Source: Styela clava
Taxonomy: Eukaryota
Length of the DNA: 64,000 nt
Direction: 5' to 3'
Assembly (NCBI RefSeq): GCF_964204865.1
Contig: NC_135254.1
Span: 23,684,001 to 23,748,000 of the forward strand
Below, piece after piece: positions 561 to 64,000 of the stretch. Each line of letters opens with the position of its first letter. The first letter of the stretch is position 1. The position numbers and the translations under genes are program-made. The notes beneath the pieces are model-generated. The model saw nothing but the letters and a program-made list of their open reading frames with translations. It was not told the DNA's origin and did no database searches.

Positions 561-3500
561 CCAGTCCTTGCAAAGTTTCCCCAAAACGATGTCATCTGAA
601 GACTAACTTCTACTTCTGCCAATGTCGAACCAGTTGTTGACATTGGGACACCAAACACATATGCCAGTTCTTCAGCATGTCTAGCACCAGTTACCCAATC
701 AAATTGCTCATCAGGCGAATATGCTTCAAAATAGCAAGTAAGTATTGCTCGAATTTTAAAACGGTCAATAGTATACTATTCCCAAATGCAGCATCGAGTT
801 ATTTCATAGAATTCTTATTCTCTGGTTAGAGTACTAATCATGGTATTTAACATGCAATCATTTTTGAACAATTGCATGTGATTAAGGTTTGAAACTTGAA
901 TCAAATTTTTCGCAGTGGTTTTTTATGTTCTATCAAATGGTAGATATTTTGCAAAAAGGATATTTATGCCACATTTTCACTAGTACTGAAAATATATTAT
1001 GGAAATATTCTTTAAATCAACATTTACAAAAATTAATCTTAAATTAAATCATAATTATGTAATTACCCCATTTTGTGTTGGCTATCGCTTCTGATGGCCT
1101 TGGAGTAAATATATAAAGATAAACATCAGAATTAAATCCATCTTCATCTGAAGCGAGATTTGAAAAATTTACAGTTGGTGATAGAATATCAAAATCTCTT
1201 GTGGCATTTATAGCGAGCCATTTCCAGTCATCAGCATTGGTGGGAAGGGGTTCTGTCCAATCAACATAGTTGAAAAATACAGCATCTGCAATCTGTACAA
1301 ATTATAAATGTTATTGAAATAAAGGTTAATATTAAAAAAAATGGTAATTTTTTCCCACTATTTTCTGTTACTATTTCATCTTAAAAAATCAATCCGAACT
1401 CATACAGGACGCTGAAATCACTTTACTTATTCCATTTTATTTAACATTGATTCCTGAAAGTAATAGATACTCCAAAAAGTCAAATTTGGAAAAATTAGGA
1501 AATTAATAAGAAATTATTGGTTGATAATCGACATACAGAGAACAGAATTTAGAAACAAAGATCAATGCCATCAATTGTTAATTGAACCATGACATTGAAA
1601 TTGCCTGCTAGTTTTGAAGTTTGGTTAGAAACTACAAGCCTTTGTATCGAAAACAACCTATAAAAGACTTTGAAAAGTATGGCCATGATAAATATGAGCA
1701 TATTCGCAAAAATAAAACTTACTTTACTTGGATCTCTAAAATCCTTTGCGTGAAATTGTTCGATAAAATCGTTGAAATTATCTGCGTCCGTAACATTGTC
1801 AAGTAGTGAATAATATACCAGTGCATCAAATGAATTTAATCCTACAATGTAGTCGTATTTTCCGCGTAGTCTGGATATAATATCTTGGTCATTAGAAAGG
1901 TTCTGAGGTGTGGCAGGGAAAATTTCGCCATCAACGACTGGTCCGAATGAAAGTCCAATCGATGCTACCATTATTTCAGCGGCAGTTTTTTCTCGGATAC
2001 ATTCAACTGCGAGAGTGGTTGAGTATGTGGGACAAGCTAATCGTTCGAATAGAAATTGTGCATTCTGGCTGGGGTTGGTAACAAACCCAAAATCGGAAAA
2101 AGCACTTCCGCTTTCTGATATAATGCGGTGGAATAATTGTGGCTTGTCAAGATTGGTATGAGCAGATGCTGATAATGCATGGAGCTGTGTAGATGCCGCG
2201 CCCGAAGATTCACCAATTATTGTGATACGATTCTTGTCCCCGTCAAAGTTCTCTATGTTCTCATTTATCCATTGCAAGGCAGTAATCTGGTCGAGAAATC
2301 CAATGTTAGATGTTGATTTCCCATCACCTGTAATAATAATTTCGTGCTTTGTATTATTGTTGGCGCATTATTTTATGTTTTAGGTAGAAAACGTTTGTTA
2401 TGATTACGTTTACTATTTTGATACGATTCTTATTCGATATCGACACATCTGAATATTGTTTATTCGAGTTTTCGCCTTGAAATTTTGCTACCCATGATCT
2501 CTGATACACAAATTCGCTACAGGAGTGGTGACTCCTCTACGGCCCATGGGCCGGGGCCACGGCCCATTTAATTGGGCCACATGGGCCGTGGCCCATAGCT
2601 TGATGGGCCGCGGCCCCATCAGAAAAAATTCAATTATCTTAATAAAATTTTCAATTTTTACCAAATTGTCAATATTCGAACCAAAAAAATATACTCCTGT
2701 AGTATGTGTACCAGGTTAGGGTTAAGACAAAAAAATTCAGATTTTTTACATTATAGTTCTGTTATAAGTTCGGGTACTGTCTGTGTTAGCCAAGTGAATA
2801 GTTTCTTTACACAACTTCAAGGCCGAGGCCCAATTCGAAACAACTTGTCTACTCTACGTTATTTGAGACGACTATCAACTCCTTGTTCTTAGGGTTTTGT
2901 TTTTTATCAATTCTAAAAAAAACATCGTGTTTTAAAACAAGGGCTTGTTTTAAATCAATTTTTTTTTTGTACTTTTTGTATTTTTTATTGAAAACCCCCT
3001 GCATCGCCGCGAAACTACGCAGAAACGTTGCATTCTGGCAGCTGCACACGCAGCCGGAATTATAATTTCAAAAATGCAAGTAAAGATTCTTATTTTGACT
3101 TTTACTTCTATTGCGTACATTTATTGCCATGTTTGTATCTTCAATAAAGTCATAAGATTTTAACCGGAATGTTTATCCGAGATATCAGAGAGACATTTCG
3201 ATCAAAATCAAAACGAGAATATCGGTCTAAGACCGAAGACTTGTCGATCGAAAGTTAGGTATTTAACGTAATGGCTTATCGGTTGCGTCTTACTGCGCAA
3301 ACCACTGAACTACAGCTTGAGAAGGTGTGTATGAGCCTCTATCGACATTTATGGCGTTTTGAAGGATTTATTGCAAATAAGGAAGCGCTTGGCAATTTTT
3401 TACATTCATTTTTCTTCAACATATTTTATACAAAAAAATCAAATAGTACAGCCATTTAGAACGAAAAAGCAAAAAAAAAACTCGATTTAAAACAACTGTT

Positions 3501-4654
3501 TTGAAACAATTCTTTTTGAACAAATCCCTACTTGTTCTGTTTACCTTCTTCGACGTATTTGAAGTATGATAGTGTGTCATATTAAAATCTACCATGCAGC
3601 AATCGATATCAAACTTTCAAACACTTTGCTAGTTATTAATTCTTTATAATTTTGTTCATATTGGAACAAATGCACGTGGTCAAATTTGTATGCCCTTCTC
3701 GAATAATATATACAATATTATGTTGATACCCTGTCTGAGCGTGCATTTCGAGAACGTGCTGATATTGAGCCACATTCTCCCTCTTAATAGATTAGAAAAT
3801 CCTCCAGAATTTTGAGGGATACAATTGTTATTTTTATATCTGCTCTGTTTTGGTATCTGCATAAAGCTACTTCAAAATACAAGCGACCACTCGCGTGTAT
3901 TGTTTCACAATAAAACTATCGAAATAGTTAAGACACGTGAAACTCACCCGCACTTAGAAATCCCAAAGCCCCCAATCGGTAGTTCATTGTAACTACTATA
4001 ACATCACCGTACCATGCTAACTCGCCGTCGTAGAAGTCCGCAGACCCCCGCCTGTTAAAACAAGCCGATAGTGTTTAAAAATTCAGTAGTACGAACAAAT
4101 GATCACTTCTTTGATATAAGGCGATATAAATAATTATATGGTTCATTTAGGGCGCAGGATAGTTTTCAGGGGGAAAGGCAATTCAAATTAACCAGGCCCT
4201 ATTAATGCCAGCCTGGATCGTTCTACTGGTAATATACGCTGTTGACATACATGTATCCTCCTCCATGAATCCAAACCATTACAGCAAGGGGCTTCTCAGA
4301 AGATGTGTAGTTCTTGCGAGGAACGTAAATATTCAAATACAAACAATCTTCTTCTCCTAATACTTCACCGTTGATTGTGGATATTTGGGGGCACACTGAT
4401 TTGAAAGAACTGGCATCTAACGGATCCGACCATGTTTCGTGCGGGCTAGGAGGTCTCAATCTTCCTTCGCCAACAGGAGGTGCAGCATACGGAATTCCAA
4501 AATACTTCTCGATGGTCACTGAGGGTGGAAATTCTCGAACAAATCCTTCTATTACGCCATAATTTGTATTGCGACGAATTACTTCATTAGCTGCCAGGGA
4601 AAAGCTTATGTGCTTTACTAAAACACAAACTATGATGAAATAGGGTTGTAGCAT
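561..4654 (-). CDS. Secreted type-B carboxylesterase (COesterase family, bile-salt-activated-lipase-like triad), 3'-partial; exons 4654-4251, 4051-3948, 2327-1723, 1292-1067, 723-561
   Basis: Signal peptide [21 protein letters not shown]. Family motifs: [59 protein letters not shown] (Ser 2206-2208), [19 protein letters not shown] (Asp 1825-1827), [13 protein letters not shown] (His 677-679), FWGNFARTG. All introns are GT-AG with compatible phases (2,1,0,1,2). The last donor (555-560) leads off the window. Confidence 0.93.
2517..2885. repeat. GC-rich GGCCC/GGGCC palindrome cluster, probably the end of a non-autonomous DNA transposon
   Basis: Hairpin AGGAGTGGTGACTCCT. Repeated (G)GGCC(C) motifs at 2541-2617 and 2821-2831. 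CTACAGGAGT (2517) and ACTCCTGTAG (2693) are inverted. Confidence 0.45.
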
Positions 4655-10100: not shown

Positions 10101-13100
10101 ATTCCGGATGTTTAATGAAATCGTGTTCAGCACAAAATTGTTCCTGTTTGGTAAATTTTGGTTCGAGTAGATTGAATGCGATTGTTTTGTCATGAATGAT
10201 TACATAATAAACCGCCGCTGCACGGTATGAAAACAAACGACGATCTGTGCTTTAGTCGATTGGTCAGAAACTGTTTTAGGACCCAAGTATTCAGAAAGTG
10301 ATGCTAAAAATATTAGATCACTTTATACTAGCGATATACCGCCGGAAAAGTCGACACAAAAATATTCCGACTCTTTGGCAGTGATTACTATGAGTCGTGA
10401 TGCATTTTTTCAATCCACGATATGGTCCATGGATAGTGAATGTAATATTAGCCCGTTCGACCTTTGTTTTATGCATACCAACAGTACTTTTGAATGCTAC
10501 ATAATATGGCATGATTTTCTGCAATAATTTATGAAAATTACAAAAACCAAAAAAGTAAAAAGAAAACGACATATCATCTATTAGAAAACAAGAAAAATAC
10601 AATTAAAAAAAAGTCTAAATCCAAAGACGGAAATCTGACCTCACTGCATAATTTTAAATGCTACATAGTATGGCATGATCTCCTGCCAAAAATTATGAAA
10701 TTACAAAAATTATAAAAGTAAACAGGAAACAATATATCATCTGTTAGGTAACAAGAATGATACACATTAAAAGATTGCTAAACCACAGGCCGGAAATAGG
10801 CATTGGTTGAATCTTTTTAAGATTTAGATTTCCCGGGTTTGCTCGTGTGAAATCAGGAAATGAATCATTTCCTGAGATGAGACTTCTTTATATTTTTGTT
10901 ACTTATAGATACTTATTTAAGCATTAATATAAATAAAATATTATATTTCAATATACATTGTAACTTTTTATTCATCTAAAATAAGAGAAAAAAAAATCTA
11001 GAAGAGAATACAAATACAATATTTTAAAATCTTTTCACATGCATTTGTGTAGGAATCAAATCTGATACACTGCTGAATTTATACATTCTATTATATTTAA
11101 AAATATCCATCAGTTTTATTAGATTTATATTTACATTTCAAATACAGGTAACAACAATTTCAGTTTCATTGTTACTGGTTATGGAAGATCAAAGGTTAAC
11201 GAGAACTTAATGAGAATCACAGGGGAGGATAAGATCTACATGTTTCAAACTTATGCAGGTAACAATTTTGTAAGACATATTACAAACAATTTATAATTTT
11301 GCCAACTTTAATTAATTTATTACTCATGGGTTGATTTATGATTTGTTCTAATATTTTATTTGTTATAGGTGTAAAAAAGGATATGTGTTTTGATATTTTG
11401 TGTTTTATAGAGGTTACTGGAATCAGCCCACAATCGGGAAGTGAGGAAGGAGGAACAATTATAACAGTTTCAGGAAGATATTTTGATCCCAACCCCACAA
11501 AAGACACCCATGTATGGGTCGGCCGTGAGCTTTGTGAAATAATTGATGGCTCGCAGACAGATACTGAGTTGAAATGCATCACTCCATCAAAACCATCCAT
11601 TATGGAACTTTATCCAGGTATTATAGAAAACTATTATCAAGATCTAGGCCATTTCCAGATCAGCGATATCAAATATGATTTCGCAAGGCTCTGAAAAACG
11701 TTCCAGACAAACAGCCATATAGAAACCTAGACATGCGAGGATAAAAACTCATCCGGGTAAAATTACCTACTGATTTTATTACATCCTTGGTGAATCTTCA
11801 ATCTGTAGTAGCTATCATAATGGTTCAATGATGAAAATTAGTGGAGTCTATAAAATGAAGAGGTTATTAGACAGTAAATCCAATATTTAATTATTTGAAA
11901 GTATTTAGATTTTAAAATTTATTCAAAATTAATCCATTATGAAACAAAGTTGTATTCAATATTGATCAGTTAGGACCTATAATTTTTGATTTCTATCTCA
12001 AAAATCACTAATGCAGATGAATTCGTGAATTTAGTGAAATTATGAGAACAAAAACATATATTTGTGAACATTAGTCTTGCCAAATATTAGTTTTGACTTT
12101 CATTTATCAAATTCTTCATTGGAATACCTGATATGATCAATCAGAGTCTATTATACTTTACTTCAGTAACCATTTTCGATTTTTATAATTTTTTAATGTT
12201 CTTTTTTTATTTTATATATCCAGGGTCCAGAGGAGTTAACGTTGAGGTATGGTACGATACACAGATGAATCTTGATGATGCTAGAGTAACGCTTAACTCC
12301 ACTCATGATGGGTGAGGGATTTAATTTATTTATTACCATCCTGGGATTGTTTCGTAAAATTGTGGCTTGGTTAAGCAGTAATTAATGAATTCATCTATCT
12401 GATAAATTTATTTGCATAAACACATATTTATCCCTGGTCATGCTTTTTAAGGTATAGGATATAACCTATAGGTTGCTGTAAATGAAACCAAAAATATGCA
12501 GAAAGTCTATATATCAGCAACATTGAATATTATATTTCTGCATCTTGTTTATAAATGTTTACTTATTTTTTAAATATTTTATTCCATTTAGATATGATAC
12601 TTGGGAAGCTGATTCTGCTGGGTATTCATTTGAAAATGTGACAACTATAGTGAAAATTACTGGAACTTTTGAAGTTCCTGTGGATGACAAATATCAGTTT
12701 TATATCAGATCAGATGACGGAAGTGTTTTGTATTTGTCATGCGATGGAAATTCTGCCAATGTGGTAATAAAATTTTAAAATTTTTCCTCGATACGAATTC
12801 AATGAAATAAACCTGATTATATTTTTGTTATTATATTTTCTTAATGACATTGTAAAAACATAAATCCCTGCACCACATGATGATATGTTGTTTTTTTCCA
12901 GGAGAAAGTGGCTTATGCATCATCTTATGCTCCTCATTTTAGACACTTTTCATCACAAAAATCGGATTGGATGGACCTAGATAAAGGTCAAACTTTTTGA
13001 TGCTTTCTAGAAGAACTATAGCAATTTGAACTTTTATGGTTACCTGATGATGTCCAACAGCCCCATAATTTTTATGTTCAAAAAATTGTTATTATTAATG

Positions 13101-22100: not shown

Positions 22101-25100
22101 GATTATTCTGGATTTAATCACTGTTGTAGAATATATGTTGCCCCTGCCAGTGATACAAGAATGCACTTTCTCATTGGTTACCAATCTTGAATGTACCAAA
22201 AATGTACTGCTCTGATTAAACGTAGAGTTATGATTCTCAAAACCAATGTGTAATACACCAGACAGAACTGAACATCTGTATCTGACAATTTGATTGTTTC
22301 AGGAGGGATATTTTTGACACTTACTGGTGTTGGTCTGAGTTCTTCACTTTCTGTTGAAATCAATTTTGTGGATTGCCCTGTTGTGTCAGCATCACCTACA
22401 ACTATTCAGTGCGTTGTTCCACCCTCTTCTACTGAAGCATCATACTCTGTTGAGCTAATTACTAACTCTGGAACGAGAACAACAGTTGGTACTTTTGAGT
22501 ATTCAAATGCTGGAATGCCAGTTGTCACATCTATTTCTGGAGAAAACATTATGGGGCCGGGTAAGTTGATTACATACTAGAAATATAACAAAATTGACTC
22601 AATGCAAGATTAACAAGATGTTTCAAGCTAGTGAAGATAGCTACAAATTATTTTGAAAAACCAATTATTTGCCTGAAACAATGTTGTAGGAATATGCAAC
22701 AACACTTAAAAAATGTAGCAAGTTGTTTGATAAAATTTATAGATCATCATTGTGACTGAGACAACAATATTAAATATAAATAACTAAGATTGGGACAGTG
22801 CCAGAACAATAGGGAAGCTAAATTTGGATTAAAATCAATAATTAAAGGACTTTTCAACACTGTAAAAAAGTTTTTTAAACTTACAGGAGGAACATCTGTG
22901 ATATTGAGTGGTTCTAACTTCGGAACTGTGATCGATGATATTTTAGTTACCATAGGAGGACAAACTTGTGAAATTCTTAACTTATCTGATACATCAATTG
23001 AATGCACTTCACCATATCTTTCCAGTGGAACGTATTCATTGGAAGTTCTGCTAACTGGTCTTGGAGCTGCTGATCTTGGGTATGATAATGGATATAATAA
23101 GCTCAAGAACTTACACTAACAAATAATAAATTGTTTCGTATAAACTGTATATTATTTAGTATAAACTGTATTTCTCAGATATAAATATGCATGTTATGTC
23201 TAATAATCGTGAACAATGTTAAATTGCCATGCTAAATTTTCACCCTCTCAGTAAATACTAACCAAAATAGTAGACATATTCAGATTTCCAAAGAAAGTCT
23301 GGATTGTATCCTCAGACATCGTGTGTTTTAGTAATACTGAGTCATTTTTGCAGAACAAACAGTATTCCTGATATTGTATATACTTTTATTGTAACTGATA
23401 TCCAACCAAGAATGACTTCATTATTTGGCGGGCAGACCTTGGAACTAACAGGAAATGGTATGTAATGTTTTGACTGGCCACTATGACCTAATTACTTTTT
23501 TTTATTCCAGCATATTTATGAATATTTCAATTGAATAGAAAAAAATTGCAAATTTTTTTTTTATAAAAGAATTGGTTTTATCACATTGTACGCTGAGTTA
23601 TTTTACATGAATTCTTCAATCAATTATTGGCCTTTTTTGGTAATTTTGAACATGTTAAGTAAGTTTTTATTCAGTAATAAAATAACTTATTTATATATAA
23701 CATTTACAAAAAAGTTTAAATTTCAAGAGCAATTATGATAACAATATTACATCGAAAGTTTTTGAGAGTAAATGTATCTGTTACATAATGAAGTTTTTCG
23801 TGGTATTGAGCTTTATATTATATACAATACGTTTTTGTATCATTATAAAAATATGCAGAATCTATTTAAAATTGACAATTCTTCCCTAGGATTTTTGGAA
23901 GACACAACTGTTTCATTGGGTTATGTTGATTGTGAAGTTACAAACATTATGTCAACCTCACTTTCGTGCACATTGGGTTCAACTGCACAAATTCATTACA
24001 TTTATAATGAAGGAAGCCATGCTGGTAAATTTCAGAAGTTATATCTAATTTTTCATTTATACTTGAGTTATAAACAAATAGGTTTGTGTGTGATTTGGTA
24101 TATGCCAATCCCATGATTACTAAATTTAAGCTTGACGTATTCACCACATAAATATCAGAATTTGCCAAAGCAATACTAGATGAAAGTCTCAAAGTGATAC
24201 TAAATTATGCTAATACACCATTTACAAAATTATTAGAATAGGTTCATTCTTAGAGCGTGACTTTCTTTTTTCTTCAGCAGAAAATGAAAAAGTCTACTTG
24301 AGTATGCAAGTGTTTATTTATATTAGATGGGCATGCCATGTAGAGACCTAATTTGAACTTTACCAATCCAAACAGTCATGATATATATTAGGTGTTACTC
24401 ATTTTCCTTTTTGAAGTCACAATATTAACCTTTTCTTATATCATAAATTTTTATGGGTGATGACAAAGTTATACGTAGATGCAGATAAATAAGTTTATTT
24501 CAACTAAAAGGGTTGAACCTTTAAACTTGACTAGCGATTTATGCGAATTTGATTAGCATAAATAGGTTTTATGAATACAAACTTGATACTTATATGCTAT
24601 TTACAAGTATATTACAATTTAAATTGCTCAAGGTAAATAAGTGTATTTAGTTGAAGAAGAGAAACGATGTGTATTTCAAATTCTTTTACAGATTTTGGTT
24701 TTGGTTATGCTTGGCTTCCTGATGTGATGACAATTGTACAAGGAGATACAGTCGTCTGGGACTGGTACTTTCCAGAGTGGATTGATGACATTGATGGCAT
24801 CGAAATATTCGAAACATCTGTACCAGATGGTCTAACACACAACGGTGGATTTTTATCAGGATATGATAGGACTTTAACAGGTATATTGGTATAGTGCTCA
24901 TATAATTTTTCTTAGATTAACCTTTGGGGCGCTCCAAAATGCCGACTGCTCATTATTAATTTAAATAAATATGAACCATTTTGATATTACAATTTCAATA
25001 GAAAAAATATAATTCGGAATCAATTGGACGTTGGGTATGGCGTTTGATATTGGCGTCATAGTCTGTTCATACATCTATTTAATATTGTAATTTTGACAAC

Positions 25101-28100
25101 AGCTCTGACTATCAAATTGGCAGTCAGTGTTCTGATCAACTGCAATGTATAATAAGACAAAATCTTAGATTATAATAATAAAAACAATGGATTTAACTTT
25201 AGGCCGTACAGTTATTTTTGGCTTTTACAGTCTATTTCTTCTAAAAATAATGCACATATATAAATATAGAACAAAATTCGGACTTCCAGAAGTATGCGCA
25301 CCAAGATGGCGCACAACCTGAACATAGTATGTGTGTACCGGTTAGGATTCAGGCTGTGCGACATCTTGGTGCGCATACCTCTGGAGCCCCCAAAATTCTG
25401 ATTTAATATGTGAATGTGATACATACAGTGGCATGCTATGATTATTCCTGGCTATATATGTGAGTTAGTCTATATTTATGTTTTTATCTGATACAAAGAA
25501 AAAAACTACAATCTTGTTGGTTAATAATAAGATTTCATTAAAGCATTTACAATCTTTTGAATACAAGAATTGTTATGAAACTTCCATAATTTGATAATTC
25601 ATGAGTCAATAAATAATCTATATACGGTAGCTTAATTTCAATTTCCTTAAAGCATGTGTTACAGTAATTCATTTTTATTGCTGGATATGAAATGAACTCT
25701 ATATTCAATACAGAGTAATAAACCTTTCAGACATAGTTTATTTTTGCATTCTAGTTCTATGCAGTATCAATTTTTTTCATAATTTTGCTTCTATATTATT
25801 TTAGGAACATTCTCCCATACCTTTACCTCGGTTGGAACCTTCTATTATTCAAGTGGATATGTTGATGATGAAGACTATGGTTCAATCCTTATGTCTGGAA
25901 CTATAAATGTTGTGGCACTAAGTGATATTTCTCTAGGGTCTGTATATTATTCAGTTTTTATCATGCTTTATTTACAAATTTATTTTCCATGACTGATTGT
26001 ATTGACATCCAATTGTGCCTCTTTAGAAAGGAGTTATAAAAATTTTATAAATATGATTCCTCTTACAGCCTTCTTTATTAAAATGATTATTAAAAATTAG
26101 TATTCTGTTTACTATCAGATGTTTAGTTGATTAGCGTAGCACAAAATCATAAATGCCACAAAGTCACAATGCTTCCGTTCCGAACAAGTATGCAAAGTTG
26201 CAAACATTTCATAAAGTAAATTCTTCAATCTGAATCCAGTCTGTATAATCAGTTTATGTTAATGAATACTTATAGCACACTTGCATAAACACAGCTTAGG
26301 TCTTGTTTTGGAAACAATCCTGGTATGAATTTACAACTTTGTGAAATTGTTTTTCTTCTCTTTTAAAGGATATTTTTAAGCATTTATTTCAATGAATCAA
26401 ATATGTACTTTTCAAGAAGCTGGTATAAGAAAATGAACAAGATGTAGACTATTATCTACTAACCTTTTTAAATTCCGAATTATCATTTTTATTTTCAAAG
26501 TCATTCATATTTTTAGATTGGAAGTTCAAAATAATGGAATTCCTGCAGAAATCAATTTAGTCACCAATGGTAATATTAAACTTATTATAGCTTTGTTGTA
26601 CATTCTTAACTTGTTCATAAGTAAAGTAATCATTTTATTAGTCTTGTAGGCCATCAATTGGTACATAACCTTATGACAGTGTTTCCCTTTCCCAACCTTT
26701 TTTAGTCGCGAACTATTTCCTCACCAGGAAAAATCTTTGCGGACTCAACATGCGTTAATTGTAAAACAGGACTCGAGGGTGCTCTATCATTGAGACATTG
26801 AGAACTGCTCGCTCTGACAAACTCGAAAAATATTACGTGATCGCTGGCGACGATTCACTGAGAAAAATTATAGGATGGAATTTGCAGCTAAAATTTCCAA
26901 ATAAATTCATTCTAATTATTATCTCTCAAATGGACTTTGATTGTCCTCATCGCCTTCATAAAATTAATAAATTAACAATATCTTTATGACTGGCTCCTGG
27001 ATTCGCTGTCCTTTTTCTGTTTGTATCTTTCTATTGTCTCTATAATATTTTTTTCCTCAAAACAAAATCTCTGAAATGCTGTTACTGCGTATCCGTCGAA
27101 ATCTGATAGAGTTCACTTAATGGTATTTCATATTCAAATTAATATATCCTCTCGGAAAATTTTGAAATGTTACATTTTTATTATTTGTGATTCGAATTTT
27201 ATCAAATGGCCCACTAAAAAGATGCGAAAGTCATGTGACATTGGCGCACAATAAGATCATTTAAAATTGGAGCAATGGAAAACAAACAGGAAACAAATAG
27301 ATAGAAAAAATATACCCCTCAATTTTAACGAAAGCGAAGGTACGTGTATACTCGTATTTTTGTCAGAAATCCGCAAGTGCGGTGTGCAATCCAATCGTTT
27401 AATTCAGCGAGGCGCGATTGACGTGCCGTGTCCAAGCCACATGTTATTAGGTATTCGAATAGTTTACTGTTCAAATATTTTTCCCAGCCTTACTCAGTAA
27501 CAGGTAATTATTGACTCGGTTAATTTTATTTGAATATACTTGCTTTTTATGTTTTAATTAAATACTTAAAACTTGACTTGACTGGTTTGGTAAAATCGCT
27601 TGCGCCCCGCAATGAATTTCGCGACACTAGAAAAGTTAGTGACCTACATGAAATATACTACTACATAACGTTCTAAAATGGTATTATTGCTCCCTGGACT
27701 ATTGCTCCGCGGACTCATTTGAGAATGCGGACTTTGGTTGGAAAACACTGCCTTATGAATAACATAGTCCTATTTTAATACAGATGGAATAACTAAAAGA
27801 GGAGCTCCTTGTGTGCCACTCAATGCTGGAATAGATGGATGCGCTCCAAGTGAGTTTGGCCGATTTTATGAAATCTTACTTACTTTTGTTTATATGTATC
27901 ATTATGATGAAAGTGGTCTTGAATATTACCAGTCATTGAAACAGGGTTGTTTTTTCTTGTGTGAATAGGTCATGAAAGGGCATTTCTAATTTTAAAAAAT
28001 TTATTTTTGTTTCTGTAATTGTATTATAACTAACATACGATATATATTATTTAAATACATTGATATTAGCCCAGTAAAAATTGTTGCATTTTTGTCTTAT

Positions 28101-31100
28101 TTTCCTTGATTTTGACAGGTCGCAAAAAAAGGGATATTGGCATTCGTAGTCGAACAAAAAGAGGAACAGGTTCTATAGTAACAATAACAGAAGATTACAA
28201 AAATCAATTTTTACACTCTCATAATAATGCAAGATCGAATGCGTATCCACAAGGGTCAAACATTATACTAATGGAATGGAATGATGAAATTGCTGCCAAT
28301 GCAGAAAGTTATGCAGAGTAAGTGTGTAAATATGAAGAACTTGAATTCATTCATATCATGACAAAATGCAATCTTTATTTATTTGTATGAAAATTATATA
28401 TGAAAAATCATTTTTTAAAATCATTCTTTCCCTTTGTATACGAGGCTCTTGTTCTATATTTATACATGTGCTAAATTTTCAGAAGTATCTAAAGGACTGG
28501 GTTTGTATTTATCTCGAAGTTTATTTCATCCTATGAGATCTTTTGCCAGTTATATCTTTTGAATACATGGCTATGGTTTGTGGAGGAAGCCCCATCCTAA
28601 TCTACCATGTTAGCTTGAAACTTCCCACCCCCTGAGAAATCCAGCAATCTGCCATATTCAATCATTCGAAAGGTGTTTTAATTAGATGATATTATAATTA
28701 TCTCAATTTTGAGATTTCTATTTTCCTATTCTGTATTTTGGGCATTGTAACATATATTTGGCTAACTTGTTTTGACATTATTGCAACCTATTTTTTATGA
28801 ATGAATAAGAAATCAATTAGAGTGTGTTATTATTAGTAACTAAAACTTCTAACCATAATTAATGTAAGGAATAGGATTTCATTTTACTCATTCCATCAGG
28901 ATTTATCTTTTAACAATAAACTACCGTTGTGCAATTCCATATTCAGCCAGGTATAATACACACTTTCAAGGTCAAATTTTGTTTTCGGAATAAGGAGTTT
29001 TTTGTATTAACATAGAAAATGTCACAAAAAATATTAATTGATTTTTTATGCCTAATTACTATCCAATGTCTTTTAATTTCATTTGGAAGAGCCTGTTAGA
29101 AGCAGATCATGCTTGTTTCATAAAACATACCCAGTTCAACAAAAATTTAGCCTTAATAAAGATAGCGAAAGACATTTAATTAATACAATACAATTAATTA
29201 TCTCAAGTGTTAGCTGCAGTCATTGTCTCATCTAGGTTGTTTCTCTCGTTTTGCCAAATCGGCAAAACTTTAGGGACATAAATCACCAAGTGTCACCCAA
29301 ATTAATGACAGGCAAAAACAGGCTCTCACGTCGACCTTATGAGCTTTTAAAAAGAAAGTTGACCAATAATAGCACATCATGACTGGGATGTGACGCAACC
29401 CCCCGCTTGGGGTATTATGCTTAGGATTGAGAAATTTTCCTGATTCATGTGCTAAAATGCAAATGCGTATTATCTATTGATACATATTATACAAGGAGAA
29501 GCCTGGTTTCAGAACTAGTAGACAACCAATGTAATTCAGAAAGTGTAAAAAATCATTTACCCTTTTGTTATTTGTAAATAGGCAATGCACTTGGGGTCAT
29601 AGCACTTCCGCATCAAGAGTTACGAGTGACCATGGTCAACTAGGAGAAAATCTTGCAATATATACCAGAGGAAATTCCTTGAGCAATATTGCCAATGCTG
29701 CTGTTGTTGACTGGGCTGATGAAGTATGTGTGTTTTGCATGTTTTTTATATATTGTTGTTGATGCAATATACTTTATACTCTGTTTTGGAAATACTGTAT
29801 AGTATTGATGTCACACTTAATGTTAAATTGATTATTCTTTAGTCCCTATTAGTTGGGGTTACGTAAGACTAACTATTTTTTATTGCTCTATGTCTTTGTG
29901 CTGCATATAATGTGAGGATTGTGCAACAAGATTAATGATGACTATTTTATTTGATTCAAGAGTCTTACTGCACACTAACACAAATTTATTTCTATAATGT
30001 TTTATCTGTCCTCATCCAGGCAAAAAATATCATTCTTTAGTTAAGCATTTTGCTTTAAGAGTGAAGGAAATATCTACCTTTAGCTTTTTGATTCAGCGAA
30101 AAAAAGTAATGTTTTAATAATAGTACTTTAAGTATCCAAAATTTGGTAAAATGAAATTTGAGAAGAAAAATATTGCTTTGTCATCAGATTGAATTAACTG
30201 TATTTATTATCAGGCAATTGTGATAATGTTCAAAAATGTTCTGATAATATCATGACCCAAATGTGTATATACTGGAGTGAAAATTTCTTATTATACAAAA
30301 CTGCTTTTGTTGTATGCAATGGGTAGAAAGATAACATTATAACACTTCATAATGTATTCGCAATTAAAGATTCTAGAACATTAACATTAATACAGAAGCT
30401 GTTTTTCAAGTATTTGAGTGCTTATTGTATGATCTGTTTTATTGCATCAAAATCTTGGTTCATCTTTTTATCTTTTTATATTGCTTAATACTTGAAATAA
30501 TAAATATTATCAGCTTGATTTTCAATCTTTCTCACATTATATTTTTACTAAAATATGTTTTTATAATCCTACATTTTTAGGTAGCTTTCTACAATTTCAG
30601 CACTTTATCGTGTCAAGATACAGAAGTTTGTGGACATTATACACAAGTTATCTGGGATGACAGTTATGCTTTGGGCTGCGCCATTGCTGACTGCGAGGAA
30701 GCAGACATTGAAAATGATCCATTTACTGACGCAACGTATCAAGGAGCTTATTATATTGTTTGTCAATATGGACCAGGAGGAAATTTCAAGTTGGTATCTC
30801 TTGCTAAATTCAAATATATGCAAATATAGGAAATTTTTATTCTGGTTTGCATTGGATTGAATAAGTATTTCAAGAAGCTATTCATCGAATTTCACTTATA
30901 CTTTTGAATTGTTATACAACATTAATTGTTTAATTATTTTTAGCCCAAGCACTAATCCTCCATATGACGAAGGTGTTCCATGTTCAAACTGTCCTGCTGA
31001 GTTTCCAGCTTGTGATTCAACATATACTTTGTGTGCAAAGGAAACTGGTGGTGGTGGGGATGGTAATGGCGATGGAGGTAAAATTTTTATACTAAGATTG

Positions 31101-34100
31101 TTTTAAACTTCTGTATATTAAAATAAATCCTAGTCTCTAAGGTGGATAAATGGAGAATATGTGTGAGGCAAATTAAACAATTAAATAAGTTTGTTACTAA
31201 ATTAAATTTGAATTATTCTGAGTATGTCTTTGTTTATTTATGTTTGTTAGTTATAAGTAAAGTGAGAAGGTAATTTCCAATGTATGGTTTTCAAATCAGT
31301 GTTACCAATATTGTTTAGACTATGTTTAAGTATAAGAAGTAAGTGATTAGCAAAACTACTATAGTGTGCTATCTTTTATATATTATATTAATGATATATA
31401 TATTATTAATTTATATGAGTATTTCTCATCTTTTTTTGATTGCTTTTAGATGTTACCGCATCAGTGTGCTTCACCCCAACTATAACAAGCATTTCACCTC
31501 AATTTGGGACTGTTGATGATGTTATTACTATTGAAGGTATGTTCCACAAATGCCGATATTTGGTTAAAGGTTTATATTCGATTACTTTTTAATTTTATTT
31601 GAAAACAGTTTGCAAAAAATGTGGATTGCTGTTCTTTCAAACTGTTAATCCATTTAAAACCTTAAAAATGAACAACTACAAGCAATAGTCAAACAAGAAT
31701 TTAGATAAAATCATTGAGAAAGATATATCTTTTTTTTTATCTGAATTCCTCGTTCCAGGGCTAGGCTTTGTAAGTGATATGTTATCAGTTTTGTTTTGTT
31801 CGTTGTGCAACATCCATCCGCTCCATTGTATATGGACACAAATTTTGTCCATGTTCCAAAGTCGTCTTTTGCTATTGAGTTAAATTTATCTACCTGCAAA
31901 TTGTTGTGGAGAATATTTTCTTTAATGCAAAAAATCTCTTGTCACTTATCCCAAAAGTAACGCAAGTCAAATACTGTTCAAATTCCTGTTTAACTCCATA
32001 TCATTCTTAAGATTGTTGTCCAGTTCTAGTAACTTTTTATTGAAAGCAGACTATAAATTGGGTAATTAACTCTGATACATTCTCAAACATCACACATTAA
32101 ATCTGACTGCGGGTGGAAGAAACGATGGTATCATTGTCATTTATATAATTCCCAATCAGCTCAAATAAATCTTGTTCTTTCTGGGGTTGAGGGGAATTGT
32201 TTCATGTCATCTTCTATTCTATGCACACATTCTAAAATTGTATCATTCGATAATATACTGGCAATAGCCAACGCTTATTTATGAATCATGCACTGAAATC
32301 CAGCAATGCATGGATTTTTCTGTTTTATTCTGAGGTTAAATTTAATTAGGGAACTCAGTGCTACGAAATGTTTTCAGTATGCACACCTACTACTTTCCCC
32401 CAGTTTATTTTATTTTTTTCTAAGAATACGAGTTGTTCCGAGTTATAGAAATAGCATTTTTTCTTTGATTTAAGTAGGTCAGTAATCAGTAGTTTATTTT
32501 ACACATGTCGAAAATACACATTGTACATACAGAATAAAGAAAGATAAAAAAAATGCATTTCAGTGTGAAGAGAGATGCAATAAACCAGTGGTCTTACAAA
32601 ACAGGCATAGAATATCAACAGGGGATTTTCGTGCCTCCTGGTTAGAAACAAGATATTAAATACAAATACTTTAGCTATATATGATCTTATTTATATTTGG
32701 CATTGAAAAACTGGAGACATTCTTTTCAGGAACCGGATTTGGTGATGATAGTTGCAGAATATCTGTTGTTATTGGTGATGATATTTCGTGTACAGTTAAT
32801 TCATCAACAACAACCGCCATAACTTGTACTCCCAATCCTAATGCTGGTGCAAATATTGGTATTTCTTATGAGGTAATTGTTTTATACGATTATAAGATTT
32901 ATTCGCTATTGGTCATATTCAATACTTTGTATCTTTACGAAAGAAAAACTATGTGTATTGTTATAAATGCAATGTAACTTACCAAGCATAGCACATTTTA
33001 CTCTTATGACATGCATTTTTAATAGGTTGTATGCTTACAACACTAGTATTTTGTTAATTTGTGATCTATATTTGATAACAACGTTTTTTTGTACTAAACC
33101 AGTGTTGAAAATATGTTTTATACATATTACATTATTAAAGTTAAACTCTTTTTGGTGTATGAATTTCTTTTTATATAGATACTTAGTATTGAAAACTTGT
33201 TGTTATAGGTAATTGTCAATGTGTTGGGATATGGTGATGCTTTTGTTGATATACCCACAGATGCTGACAAAAGATTTGCTTTATTGCCCTCCATATCATC
33301 AATTACACCTGCTACTGGATCTTTAGCAGGAGGAACATACATTGATATATTAGGTGAGAGTGACAACATGCTATAAAACTCCTTTAAAACTATTTTTATG
33401 CTAAATTGTTTACTCAGTTATAAATATTTACCACCAGAATATAAAGCAGGTGCCCTAGTTTATGGAAAAACTCTGACATCTAACTAAATTGGTCTAAAAT
33501 TGAGATCATCGAATGAATGTAAAACTCCCAGTTGAAGTTCATCGAAATAATACCAATTTTAGTAAAACCTCCTATCTATATTAGTGTCACATTGGTTGAT
33601 CACATTGGGTTTCACGTTGCATTTTTGACCTGGGTAGGTGATTGACACATCCACTGTTATTGTTGCTATCAAATATGCCCAATTTGTTTTCTTATGATAA
33701 ATTCGAAATATTTGTATTTTTGTTATCATTTAGATTGCAATTACAAAAGTGCTCTAATATAATTTTCACTTATTTCAGGAACTGGTTTTATGGATGATGT
33801 TACAAGTGTTAACATTGGAGGGGACGATTGTGAAATAATCGGTCAAGATTATGTCAGCATCAATTGTAAAACTTCAAGTGGAAGTCAAGGATCTCAGACT
33901 GTTGGGTAAGTCAGTATCATTTGTTATATTTCCAATTTGATTGTAAAGTTAAAAACAAAATGGGATTTCTTATTCATCTTGCAAGATTAGAAATTCATCC
34001 TCAAGGTCACCCTGAGTCATTAGTTTGTTTTTAACACTTAACTAATTAGAGCATCTAATCTAATGAAAGCATCAAAACTATCATAAAAAAAACATTCTAC

Positions 34101-46100: not shown

Positions 46101-49100
46101 ACTTCAAGCTTCAGTCAGTGCTTTTATCTAAATACTTAAAACCATGGAGAATTTTAAAATCATATAAACTTCGAATTCAGTACTTCATATATTAATGTAT
46201 AATTCTCCTGATTATTTTATGTAATATCAGTAGATTGATATTTCTGTTTATCTAGATCAGTAGTATAATGTGACTATAGTAATAAAACAAATTTCTAAAG
46301 TTTTGCTAATTTAAATTTAGCTAGTTGCATCAATAGATCTCCAACTACTCAGTTATTATCAAATAATTTTCATATACGAAATTAATCAAACAAATATAAA
46401 AATTATTGGACAATGAAATTTTGTATTTGCTTGCTGCCATAAGGAACTTGATATATAACGATGAAATGACTATTTTATCAGTAAATATTGTCTAGTACAA
46501 AAAATGTATTCAATTAGTGACAATCAATGACCCGACTTAAAACTAAACTAATATTTACTTTTGTAATATCAGGTTGGCACTGAAGATGAACCATTTCAAC
46601 ATAAAGCAATCATAACTCTTCATGGACATTTGAGATCAATTGAGCTTCCAATCTATGGTACAAAGACAATTGCAGTTCGAGATGGAATGTTAGATTTGCA
46701 TGGAAAATATGTCCCTGTGACCTGGACTTATTTAAGTGCAACTGCCAATGCTGGAACAAATGTAATCACAGTCGATAATCCTGTTACATGGGAAGCAGGA
46801 GATGAAATTGTTATTGCAAGTACAGGTATAAAAATTTGTAATAACATCCCATCTCATTATTAAAAGTTAGTTGGAATAGTCTTGTGAATATTAAGATTGA
46901 ATAAATTACAAAGAGACCAACCAGATGACAGAAATCAAATGGATAATAAAACTTAGAATATAGAAGATAAATGTATGAAAGGTTCATTTGTATCCTAACA
47001 TCAACATGATTTGCAATTAGAATACTCATTATATCATGAAAGTCTTCCAGCATTATATTTTTTTCATGAGAGAATTGCAGAGATATGGTAGTGTCCATAC
47101 TAGCTTTGCCGAATATTTGCCCAAAATAAAAATAAAATTGACTTGGGTATTTTAGGAGAAAAGACTTTCATGAAATACATGCAATTTGGTCATCTTGTTG
47201 CTTCAATAATTCGAATGAGCTTAAGTTCTTCAAAATTTATGAAATCAACTGTAAAATCTGGAGGACAGTTATTGAATTCATACACACATGCCTATTTTGT
47301 TGGGAAAGTTCAAGATGGAGTTATAAGACTTGTTTCATTTTAATAACCATATTATCTATGTATGACTTTTGTTTAGGTCATCGCCACAGTCAAGAAGAAA
47401 ATGAAAAACACACCATTTTGTCTGTAGCTGGTGATCAAGTTACTATTACTTTGGAAACTGCATTGGAATTTGACCATTTAGGTGTTGTAGAAACTATGCC
47501 AGGTAAGCTGCCAGTCTCAATACATTTTTATACATACCGTACATTTTTATTTCACAATCATTAACTAGTACTATGTGATGAATCATTTCACATTCCTAAA
47601 CTCACCGAGTAAAGTGATAAACTTTGGTTTGCAGCAAAGCCTTGTTATCAAGTGTTATTCTGAATTGCTGTTATCAGTTCATTGGTAACATGAGTTTTTT
47701 GTATGAATTATTTCTAAATAAAAAAATACTTCTGAATAAAAGTGATATCTTCAAGATATATTTATATCCACACATTGCAGTAATTTATTTCTCTTTTTGG
47801 GTTGATAAAAACTTGATTAATCTTTAACATAAACCCATATGTCAACTTTGCATATTACCCAGTACTTTTTATGCAGATGGAACTGTTTTAAAATCAAGAG
47901 CTGAAGTTGGGCTTCTCACCCATAATGTTCTTGTTCGTGGGTCTAGAAACATGGACTGGTCTGAAGACATTCCTGCTTGTCCAGAAGGATTTAACACTGG
48001 AGAATTTGCCCAACAAACATGCTTTCAGGTATTTTCCATCCATTAAGATTATCTTGTTTAGTTAAAATATTGTAAAGCGTATTTATGAACTGTATTTTAA
48101 TATAGGAACAATACTTGAAAAATATATAAACCTGCAGCAATGTGTACTTGTGGTTCTATACTCCAGATAATTTTTATTCATACCAACTCTGCATTTTTAC
48201 AGGGTCGTTTTGGGGAAGAAATGGGATCAGATCAATTTGGTGGACAAATTATGTTTCATCATCCTAGTCCAGATGAGCAGAAAGCCTTCGGCAGAATTTC
48301 CTATGTAGAACTTAATTATATGGGCCAAGCATTCAGACTAGGACGTTATGCGATTCATTATCATTTAATGGGAGACATGAACTATAAAAATTATGTCAGA
48401 GGATGTGGCATTCACGAAACTTTTAACAGGTGTATATTATGGTTATCAGAAAAAACTATTTCAGTATCTACAGCAGTATAACAAAAAAATAACTTTCCTA
48501 TTTGTTATATTGTAGTCTGTGCTGTGAGTTGGTCGAAATTGACTATATGTTTACAATAATATTATATCATACAGTGTCATTAACTGTTGTTATGCAAGTT
48601 TTTCTGAATCTCAATGATGGACGTAAGTCAAATAATTTTATTTTTGTAACTTTTAGCATATTGCTCCTTATGTTAAAAACATGTCATATTTGTTTTTACT
48701 CATCAATAATATTTTGAAAAGATTATGTTTCATTGTAGTGAAGGCATTTTCATATTTAAAATTCATGTTCCAGGGCTGTTACAATCCACGATACTCACAA
48801 AGCATTGGTAGAGAAAAATGTTATATTCAATTCGATGGGAGGAACAATCTTTATCGAGGATGGTTTAGAAACAAAAAATAAAATTATAGGAAATCTGGTT
48901 GTATTCTGTAGACAAAGTACTTCATTACAAAATGATGACGTTACACCAGCAGCATTTTGGATCACAAATGCTGATAACATTGTTGAAGACAATGCAGCAG
49001 CTGGTATAAAATTAATCAACTACAATTATTCTGAATTCTTAATGGAAATTTGATTTCTTTTAAATTTAAATAATTTAGATTTATATTGTAATCTTCAACT

Positions 49101-63742: not shown

Positions 63743-64000
63743 GTAATTAGTATTATTAGTACAAAATGTGGTGTACTGGTTGGAAAAGTTTATGTCGATG
63801 TTGACAATGTGTACAAAGAAAAGTCATGAAGCCAACGATCACCAAACGTTATAATTAGACAGAATTTTAAAAGTGCAAAAAACTGGTCAGATAATTTAAA
63901 TTCGTAAGTTGAAAATCTTGTTCTAACATGATTTAAAATAATCGCTGATATATTTCGTCAGTAATTGTCGTTTTAGCAAAATCATGTTTTCTTCTAATTT

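What the first reader, a model, noticed from the sequence alone, without database searches (positions are those of the whole stretch)
28119..31077. Complete CAP/SCP (CRISP/GLIPR-like) domain spliced into fibrocystin-L
Seen: four exons (684 nt) join in frame between ...GIDGCAP (exon 27784-27849) and DVTASVCFTPTITSISP (exon 31450-31536). They encode a full CAP domain that keeps the His-Glu-Glu-His tetrad (WGHS, GENL, WADE, GHYTQ). A CRISP-type hinge (PYDEGVPCSNCP..C...LC) and a Gly-rich spacer (GGGGDGNGDG) follow. Established knowledge, from memory: vertebrate PKHD1L1 has only a short linker here before the SSCFSPSI TIG repeat and no CAP domain. CAP domains are known to bind sterols, lipids and divalent metals and to act in immunity and fertilisation. 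Inference: this is a lineage-specific chimeric fibrocystin-L with an added ligand-binding module.
Basis: partly seen in the sequence, partly recalled or inferred. Interest (0 to 1): 0.88.

Follow-up and report, generated by a model that had tools for sequence, protein, structure and literature searches.

The report
CAP domain cassette inside fibrocystin-L gene
One of this animal's three fibrocystin-type giant receptor genes carries four extra exons that encode a complete, intact CAP (GLIPR1/PR-1-like) domain, copied long ago from a secreted CAP gene; whether the exons are in the mature mRNA could not be checked.

Summary
Four GT-AG exons (28119-28317, 29582-29723, 30581-30789, 30944-31077; 684 nt) join exon 27784-27849 to exon 31450-31536 in frame, with no stop and phase 1 at both ends. 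Searched exon by exon, they cover consecutive positions of a CAP profile plus a four-cysteine hinge. All four CAP signature motifs and the His/Glu/Glu/His columns are kept.

The host gene is fibrocystin-type (TIG, PA14, G8, CEMIP beta-helix). Two colinear paralogues in the same genome (C13, C1) have a single uninterrupted exon at this site and no CAP. Among 1.84 billion representative proteins, none of the 150 best CAP matches carries fibrocystin sequence. No held paper links fibrocystin with a CAP domain.

A stand-alone secreted CAP gene (C1, ~12.52 Mb) shares the cassette's intron positions and phases, its odd hinge spacing and the S-R-x-K-R-G site before the domain. The cassette therefore looks like a genomic copy of such a gene without its signal-peptide exon, that is, exon shuffling.

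Not shown:
- Presence in orthologues: no eukaryote genomes were on hand.

A signal-peptide-like ORF (27868-27931) in the upstream intron keeps an internal-start transcript possible. "CRISP-type" overstates the case, because there is no ICR domain. Interest is moderate.

The parts
27784..27849 (+). Host exon A (66 nt, phase 1 at both ends), reading ..GITKRGAPCVPLNAGIDGCAP. It is the end of the domain that precedes the insertion site.
   Evidence: Its homologue in the C13 paralogue (..KRKKRAASSCSGEVTSISGCTP) is fused to the exon-B homologue in one exon.
27868..27931 (+). Signal-peptide-like ORF in the intron between exon A and CAP exon 1: MKSYLLLFICIIMMKVVLNIT. It ends at a weak donor (A|GTCATT) in phase 1, which fits CAP exon 1. 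It may be a relic of the donor gene's signal exon, an alternative first exon, or chance.
   Evidence: The background rate of such ORFs is about 0.1 per kb per phase in this window, so about 0.03 are expected in 269 nt. This was found after the fact and has not been tested with RNA.
28119..28317 (+). CAP exon 1. It holds the linker with RKKR (28121-28132) and RTKR (28151-28162), then the first CAP helix with the HNNAR motif (CAP3).
   Evidence: Local CAP profile positions 38-84, 34.4 bits. 29 to 34 CAP proteins match it by tblastn.
29582..29723 (+). CAP exon 2: WGHS (first His), GENL (CAP4, first Glu) and WADE (second Glu).
   Evidence: Profile positions 86-127, 25.7 bits, with the conserved H, GENL and E columns matched.
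30581..30789 (+). CAP exon 3: CGHYTQVIW (CAP1, second His) and YIVCQYGPGGNF (CAP2).
   Evidence: Pfam PF00188 at E 2.5e-5, 25.5 bits. Human GLIPR1 (3q2r) at E 1.4e-13. 1360 library hits.
30944..31077 (+). CAP exon 4: four-cysteine hinge PYDEGVPCSNCPAEFPACDSTYTLC (30960-31034), then the Gly-rich spacer GGGGDGNGDG (31047-31076).
   Evidence: Profile positions 194-221. P0051 matches at E 1.9e-6. The same C-x2-C-x6-C-x6-C spacing is found in the stand-alone CAP gene on C1.
31450..31536 (+). Host exon B (87 nt, phase 1 at both ends): DVTASVCFTPTITSISPQFGTVDDVITIE, the start of the next IPT/TIG domain.
   Evidence: Weak Pfam TIG match to profile positions 1-21. 67% identical to the C13 paralogue exon.

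Best explanation
The four exons are a real, selectively maintained coding cassette of the fibrocystin-L-like gene on contig C5. An intron-containing genomic copy of a secreted CAP+hinge gene landed in what is a single exon in the two paralogues. The copy ran from the intron after the signal-peptide exon to the hinge exon. The site is the linker just before an IPT/TIG domain. Because the cassette is phase 1 at both ends, like its neighbour exons, it reads through in frame (shown). It would place a GLIPR1/PR-1-like CAP domain, with its His/Glu/Glu/His cation-site residues intact, on a Gly-rich tether in the extracellular IPT/TIG region of the giant protein (inferred). The cassette brought along the donor family's R-x-K-R site directly before the CAP domain. 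A proprotein convertase could therefore cut the chain there and leave the CAP domain at a free N-terminus (inferred, untested). The role proposed is an added ligand- or cation-binding head. Whether inclusion is constitutive or alternative is unknown, since skipping the cassette is also in frame.
For: Exon anatomy, frame and phases. CAP identity exon by exon: Pfam, colinear tblastn of 150 CAP proteins, consecutive positions in a local profile, GLIPR1 structure match. Host gene identity: TIG, PA14, G8 and CEMIP beta-helix. Empty site in the paralogues: the C13 gene is colinear exon by exon and reads ..SISGCTP-TSSTSKFSLSTD-PCYTPTITSVSP.. in one exon; the C1 gene also lacks CAP. Origin: the stand-alone CAP gene at about C1:12.5236-12.5266 Mb has a signal exon ending in phase 1. 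Its next exon starts in phase 1 and carries SRVKRG, which aligns with the window's SRTKRG. Its internal introns sit at the same positions with the same phases (2, 0, 2). Its hinge spacing is the same. Long-term upkeep: the nearest CAP exon elsewhere in the genome is only 57% identical over 37 residues, yet the cassette has no stop and keeps every motif and cysteine. Against a separate gene: CAP exon 1 has no start codon or signal peptide. Exon 4 ends at G|GTAAAA with no stop codon. Both outer phases fit the host, which would happen about 1 time in 9 by chance.
Against: No protein holding this CAP exon at more than 63% identity was found among 1.84 billion representatives, so no annotated model supports the join. 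A signal-peptide-like ORF with a phase-1 donor lies 187 nt upstream of CAP exon 1. After exon 4 the frame, if left unspliced, stops after 10 codons and ATTAAA follows, so a self-contained transcript can be imagined. The spliced protein was neither searched nor folded as a whole.
Confidence: 0.65

Rival explanations
1. The cassette is an alternative module. Most fibrocystin-L mRNA skips it (27849 joined to 31450, in frame, giving ..GCAP-N-VTASVCF..), and the CAP-bearing isoform is restricted to some tissue or stage. This overlaps with the best explanation rather than excluding it.
For: At 684 nt the cassette is a multiple of three and is phase 1 at both ends, so skipping keeps the frame. The skipped form resembles the paralogues' single-exon layout. 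The exon 3 donor GTTGGT is weak.
Against: Nothing in the sequence argues against it. The acceptors have good pyrimidine tracts, and most donors are near consensus.
Confidence: 0.25
2. The CAP exons belong to a transcription unit with its own start. The signal-like ORF 27868-27931 would act as first exon and splice in phase 1 to 28119. The product would be either a small secreted pro-CAP protein ending just after exon 4, or a CAP-headed, N-terminally shortened fibrocystin-L if splicing continues to 31450.
For: The ORF MKSYLLLFICIIMMKVVLNIT has a phase-1 GT and sits 187 nt before exon 1. About 0.03 such ORFs are expected by chance. It mirrors the layout of the stand-alone CAP gene: signal exon, phase-1 intron, R-x-K-R, CAP. 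Read-through after exon 4 stops after 10 codons with ATTAAA nearby.
Against: The donor A|GTCATT is very poor. Hydrophobic ORFs are common in DNA that is 68% A+T. The test was post hoc. A purely nested gene does not explain why both outer phases fit the host, or why exon 4 ends at a good donor without a stop codon. In both paralogues the site is exonic, so no host intron was there to nest in.
Confidence: 0.15
3. The exons are a non-functional relic of an inserted CAP gene that is now simply part of one long intron.
For: No expression data. No annotated protein with this exon was found.
Against: 228 codons without a stop at 31.8% G+C (about 1.5e-8 by chance). All CAP motifs, the cation-site residues, the conserved cysteines and all eight splice sites are intact. 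The nearest paralogue is at most 57% identical, so the copy is old.
Confidence: 0.04

Closest known systems
Vertebrate fibrocystin-L (PKHD1L1) and fibrocystin (PKHD1)
   Same: The host gene has the family's domain set in the same order: IPT/TIG, PA14, more IPT/TIG, G8 with a CEMIP/TMEM2-type beta-helix, then a second G8 with beta-helix.
   Different: The published architectures list no CAP domain (PMC13424714, PMC11043200). Here a 228-residue CAP+hinge module sits in a linker within the IPT/TIG region. One-to-one orthology, the transmembrane segment and the tail were not examined, and the gene runs past the window's end.
GLIPR1 / PR-1 / PI16-type CAP proteins (CAP domain plus hinge)
   Same: Exon 3 gives human GLIPR1 (3q2r) as the best solved match, E 1.4e-13. 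The CAP1-4 motifs, the His/Glu/Glu/His columns and a four-cysteine hinge are present.
   Different: These are small secreted or membrane-anchored proteins with the CAP domain at the N-terminus. Here the domain is internal to a giant protein. The hinge spacing is C-x2-C-x6-C-x6-C, longer than I recall for CRISPs (from memory).
CRISPs (CAP + hinge + ICR domain)
   Same: The CAP domain and the hinge-like motif PY..G.PC..CP.
   Different: No ICR/ion-channel-regulator domain follows; only a Gly-rich spacer does. It is not a CRISP in the strict sense.
Stand-alone secreted CAP gene of the same genome (about C1:12.5236-12.5266 Mb, minus strand)
   Same: It has the same intron positions and phases, S-R-V-K-R-G aligned with S-R-T-K-R-G before the domain, and the same hinge spacing with 52% identity.
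   Different: It has its own signal-peptide exon. Its CAP1 motif has decayed (CASYVAMI in place of CGHYTQVI). Its hinge exon runs on for about 35 more codons and ends in phase 0. No TIG sequence lies around it.
Other CAP mosaics (CAP+TSP1 repeats P0076; reprolysin/ADAMTS-like+CAP+SEA, Lingula anatina LOC106173376 = P0021)
   Same: The CAP domain is used as a shuffled extracellular module.
   Different: None of them carries TIG, G8 or PA14, and none matches the window outside the CAP exons.

Membership tests
CAP superfamily (Pfam PF00188) | Match to the CAP profile above the curated threshold | tested here: met
   Exon 3 alone scores 25.5 bits against a cut-off of 21.1, E 2.5e-5. The four exons tile positions 38-221 of a local CAP profile in order.
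CAP superfamily (Pfam PF00188) | Signature motifs CAP3 (HNxxR), CAP4 (GENL), CAP1 (GHYTQ.VW) and CAP2 (C.Y.P.GN) | tested here: met
   HNNAR, GENL, GHYTQVIW and CQYGPGGNF are read directly and align to conserved profile columns. The motif definitions are from established knowledge.
CAP superfamily (Pfam PF00188) | His/Glu/Glu/His cation-site tetrad | tested here: met
   The H of WGHS, E of GENL, E of WADE and H of GHYTQ align with the conserved H, E, E and H columns of the profile. Metal binding itself was not tested.
CAP superfamily (Pfam PF00188) | Alpha-beta-alpha sandwich fold | not tested
CRISP subfamily | C-terminal ICR (cysteine-rich, ion-channel regulator) domain after the hinge | tested here: not met
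   After the hinge come only AKET, GGGGDGNGDG and then the host TIG exon.
Fibrocystin / fibrocystin-L family (host gene) | PA14 + multiple IPT/TIG + G8 + parallel beta-helix (TMEM2/CEMIP-like) in this order | tested here: met
   Pfam on exon ORFs gives TIG at 11338, PA14 at 12545, TIG at 22290, 22790, 32681, 39955 and 44372, G8 at 46630 and CEMIP beta-helix at 48140. A second G8/beta-helix lies at about 54.9-57.3 kb, seen as internal similarity.
Fibrocystin / fibrocystin-L family (host gene) | Single C-terminal transmembrane segment; one-to-one orthology with vertebrate PKHD1L1 | not tested
   The gene continues beyond base 64000. The genome has three paralogues (C5, C13, C1). No vertebrate sequence was available for a tree.
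Expressed chimeric CAP-fibrocystin protein | Transcripts spanning junctions 27849/28119 and 31077/31450 | not testable with these tools

The most novel reading that the evidence does not exclude
The captured CAP module still works as in its donor gene, at a free N-terminus. This could come about through convertase cleavage at RKKR/RTKR, making the roughly first quarter of fibrocystin-L a giant shed 'propeptide'. It could also come about through an internal first exon (27868-27931) that supplies a signal peptide. Either way the animal would make a membrane-anchored IPT/G8 stalk capped by a CAP domain, an architecture and processing route not described for any fibrocystin.
Probability: 0.15. Interest if true: 0.55.

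Novelty: new variant of a known kind. Interest (0 to 1): 0.36.

Why it matters
Fibrocystin and fibrocystin-L are disease-linked giant receptors (polycystic kidney disease, deafness) whose ligands are unknown. A natural variant carrying a known small-ligand/cation-binding module at a defined linker shows where the ectodomain tolerates an insertion. It also offers a lineage-specific handle on what the ectodomain meets. In addition it is a clean case of exon shuffling. The probable donor family, the shared intron phases, the signal exon left behind and two empty-site paralogues are all visible in one genome. Beyond that it is one more mosaic extracellular protein in a genome where other scan notes (not checked here) report several CAP mosaics. 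Its function is unproven.

Tried and rejected
- **Exon 1 protein search:** The search for homologous proteins with exon 1 gave nothing. Its length window (36-114 aa) would miss longer transcript-derived ORFs, so this says little.
- **Architecture search:** I tried a search through a long CAP protein (P0021, region 840-935). The word index passed only 5 candidates and returned the query itself, so this was uninformative. The third search of that tool was left unused because the same limits apply.
- **ESM Atlas:** exon 3 returned generic CAP clusters only.
- **PDB searches:** TIG and upstream exons found plexin/MET IPT domains and chance xylanase hits, with no PKHD1L1 entry. Exon 2 alone found nothing.
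- **Organism:** the genome is not Lingula anatina, because P0021 has no match in it. The nearest CAP proteins come from scattered phyla, so they show no orthologue and do not place the organism. I did not pursue the organism's identity further.
- **Papers:** no paper combines PKHD1L1 with "CAP domain". The only paper with fibrocystin and "cysteine-rich secretory" is unrelated.
- **Strict first-exon scan:** a strict scan for an alternative first exon found none. Only the relaxed scan found 27868-27931.
- **Joined model:** the spliced protein was not searched, folded or sent anywhere. All searches were made exon by exon, by reference.
- **Assembly artefact:** rejected as unlikely, because an artefact would not give phase-matched, splice-site-bounded exons.

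Full report
**1. What is there.**
The region was read directly and the boundaries and frames were checked by script. On the + strand there are six exons, all with AG acceptors and GT donors:
- Exon A: 27784-27849.
- Exon B: 31450-31536.

The reading frame runs from A to B with no stop. Exon A, the cassette as a whole and exon B are all phase 1 at both ends. The internal cassette introns have phases 2, 0 and 2. The window is 31.8% G+C. By my arithmetic, 228 stop-free codons would arise by chance about 1.5e-8 of the time.

The joined protein was never searched, folded or sent to a tool.

**2. It is a whole CAP domain plus hinge.**
- Pfam CAP (PF00188) hits exon 3 alone above its curated cut-off (25.5 bits against 21.1; profile positions 82-117 of 117).
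- Exon 3 finds 1360 proteins in the 1.84-billion representative library. Its best solved relative is human GLIPR1 (3q2r, E 1.4e-13).
- The 150 best library hits were laid back on the window with tblastn. They match exons 1, 2, 3 and 4 in the order of one CAP domain. For example, P0056 residues 2-34, 35-80, 80-143 and 147-164 match the four exons in turn.
- A local profile built from 83 single-domain hits places the exons at consecutive positions 38-84, 86-127, 129-191 and 194-221.
- The motifs HNNAR, GENL, GHYTQVIW and CQYGPGGNF are present. So are the conserved H, E, E and H columns, and a four-cysteine hinge.
- After the hinge comes only a Gly-rich spacer. There is no ICR domain, so this is a CAP+hinge module of the GLIPR1/PI16 sort and not a CRISP proper.

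**3. The host gene.**
Exon ORFs along the + strand from about 11.3 kb to beyond 62.8 kb give, in order: TIG, PA14, several TIG, G8 and a CEMIP-type beta-helix. A second G8/beta-helix follows. That is the fibrocystin family layout. Reviews of the vertebrate proteins list PA14, IPT, G8, PbH1/TMEM2-like, SEA and TM, and no CAP (PMC13424714, PMC11043200). The cassette sits about eight residues before the start of a TIG domain (exon B), so it lies in an interdomain linker.

**4. Empty sites in the same genome.**
The window is C5:23684001-23748000 of a 377-Mb assembly. Two other fibrocystin-type genes exist, on C13 and C1.
- The C13 gene is colinear with the window gene exon by exon. At the insertion site it has one exon reading VKRKKRAASSCSGEVTSISGCTP-TSSTSKFSLSTD-PCYTPTITSVSPNNG... 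That is the exon-A homologue, a 12-residue linker and the exon-B homologue, with no CAP.
- The C1 gene is also colinear and also has no CAP. Its only nearby intron corresponds to the one before exon A.
- By exon identities, C13 is the closer paralogue (for example 82% against 45-55% at two exons).

Together with the vertebrate architectures, a gain in the C5 gene is therefore the simplest reading.

**5. Where the cassette came from.**
CAP exon 3 is unique in the genome. The next best match is 57% identical over 37 residues, so the copy is old. One stand-alone CAP gene, at about C1:12.5236-12.5266 Mb, is organised in the same way:
- Its signal-peptide exon (MMLSKVKYLVLAFITLCVA..) ends in phase 1.
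- Its next exon starts in phase 1 and reads ..TLSRVKRGD.., which aligns with the window's ..IRSRTKRGT...
- Its introns fall at the same three internal positions with the same phases.
- Its hinge has the same unusual spacing (CEECLTDFPFCDSFYSLC against CSNCPAEFPACDSTYTLC).

The cassette is thus best read as a genomic, intron-bearing copy of such a gene, from its first intron to its hinge exon. This is classical exon shuffling. The R-x-K-R site in front of the CAP domain was inherited with it. How the two new flanking introns arose is not resolved: the fragment may have landed in an exon, or both paralogues may have lost an intron.

**6. Is it in the mRNA?**
This is the weak point.

No protein with this exon at more than 63% identity appears among the representatives. 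None of the 150 best CAP hits matches the window outside the CAP exons. The long ones are multi-CAP, reprolysin/ADAMTS-like+CAP or CAP+TSP1 proteins. So there is no annotated model to lean on, and equally no sign that the architecture is known elsewhere. Orthologues whose CAP domain scores under about 49 bits, and members hidden behind a cluster representative, would have been missed.

The sequence-only arguments for inclusion are:
- matching phases at both ends;
- good splice sites;
- no start codon or signal peptide in exon 1;
- no stop at the end of exon 4;
- an old but intact frame.

Against certainty:
- A relaxed scan found a signal-peptide-like ORF at 27868-27931, with a weak phase-1 donor, 187 nt before exon 1. 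About 0.03 are expected by chance, though the test was post hoc.
- Read-through after exon 4 would stop after ten codons, with ATTAAA close by.

An internal-start transcript, or a relic of the donor's signal exon, therefore remains possible. Skipping of the cassette is in frame too.

**7. How it would work (inference).**
If included, the protein carries a CAP domain with an intact cation-site tetrad. It sits on a flexible Gly-rich tether within the extracellular IPT/TIG region. This would be an added binding head for a small ligand, a metal or a protein partner. The tandem RKKR and RTKR motifs just before it could let a proprotein convertase cut the chain. That would expose the CAP domain at a free N-terminus, as in its donor family. 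None of this has been tested.

**8. Verdict.**
The module is real, intact, in frame and absent from both paralogues and from the described vertebrate proteins. Expression, orthologue distribution and function are open, and "CRISP-type" is too specific.
- It is a new variant of a known kind (a domain-shuffled fibrocystin) and of moderate interest.

Noticed in passing
Pfam found nothing in the three longest open frames of this stretch.
   Followed up: partly
G000:C13:~14090001-14141400 (minus strand; L011-L020): The closest fibrocystin-type paralogue. It is colinear exon by exon with the window gene, 29-82% identical on aligned exons, and lacks both extra modules.
   Followed up: partly
G000:C1:~5409700-5454000 (plus strand; L021-L027): A third, more distant fibrocystin-type paralogue. 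It has no CAP, and the exon-A-like segment seems shorter or absent.
   Followed up: partly
G000:C1:~12523650-12526620 (minus strand; L033): A stand-alone secreted CAP gene with a signal exon, an RVKR site and the same intron phases and hinge spacing as the cassette. Its CAP1 motif has decayed (CASYVAMI). What follows its hinge exon was not worked out.
   Followed up: partly
window 1549-4654, minus strand: Exons of a carboxylesterase/cholinesterase-like gene. One ORF starts [13 protein letters not shown].. (signal-like) and another carries GESSGAAS, so the serine motif is present.
   Followed up: no
window 25226-25403 and 29839-30012: Short intronic stretches with translated similarity (about 48-86%) to several other places on C1 and C13. 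They are probably dispersed repeats or transposon fragments.
   Followed up: no
window 27784-27849 and C13 homologue: A basic motif also lies in the host part just upstream of the site (TKRG in the window, KRKKR in the C13 paralogue). Dibasic sites near this linker are therefore not only a property of the cassette.
   Followed up: no
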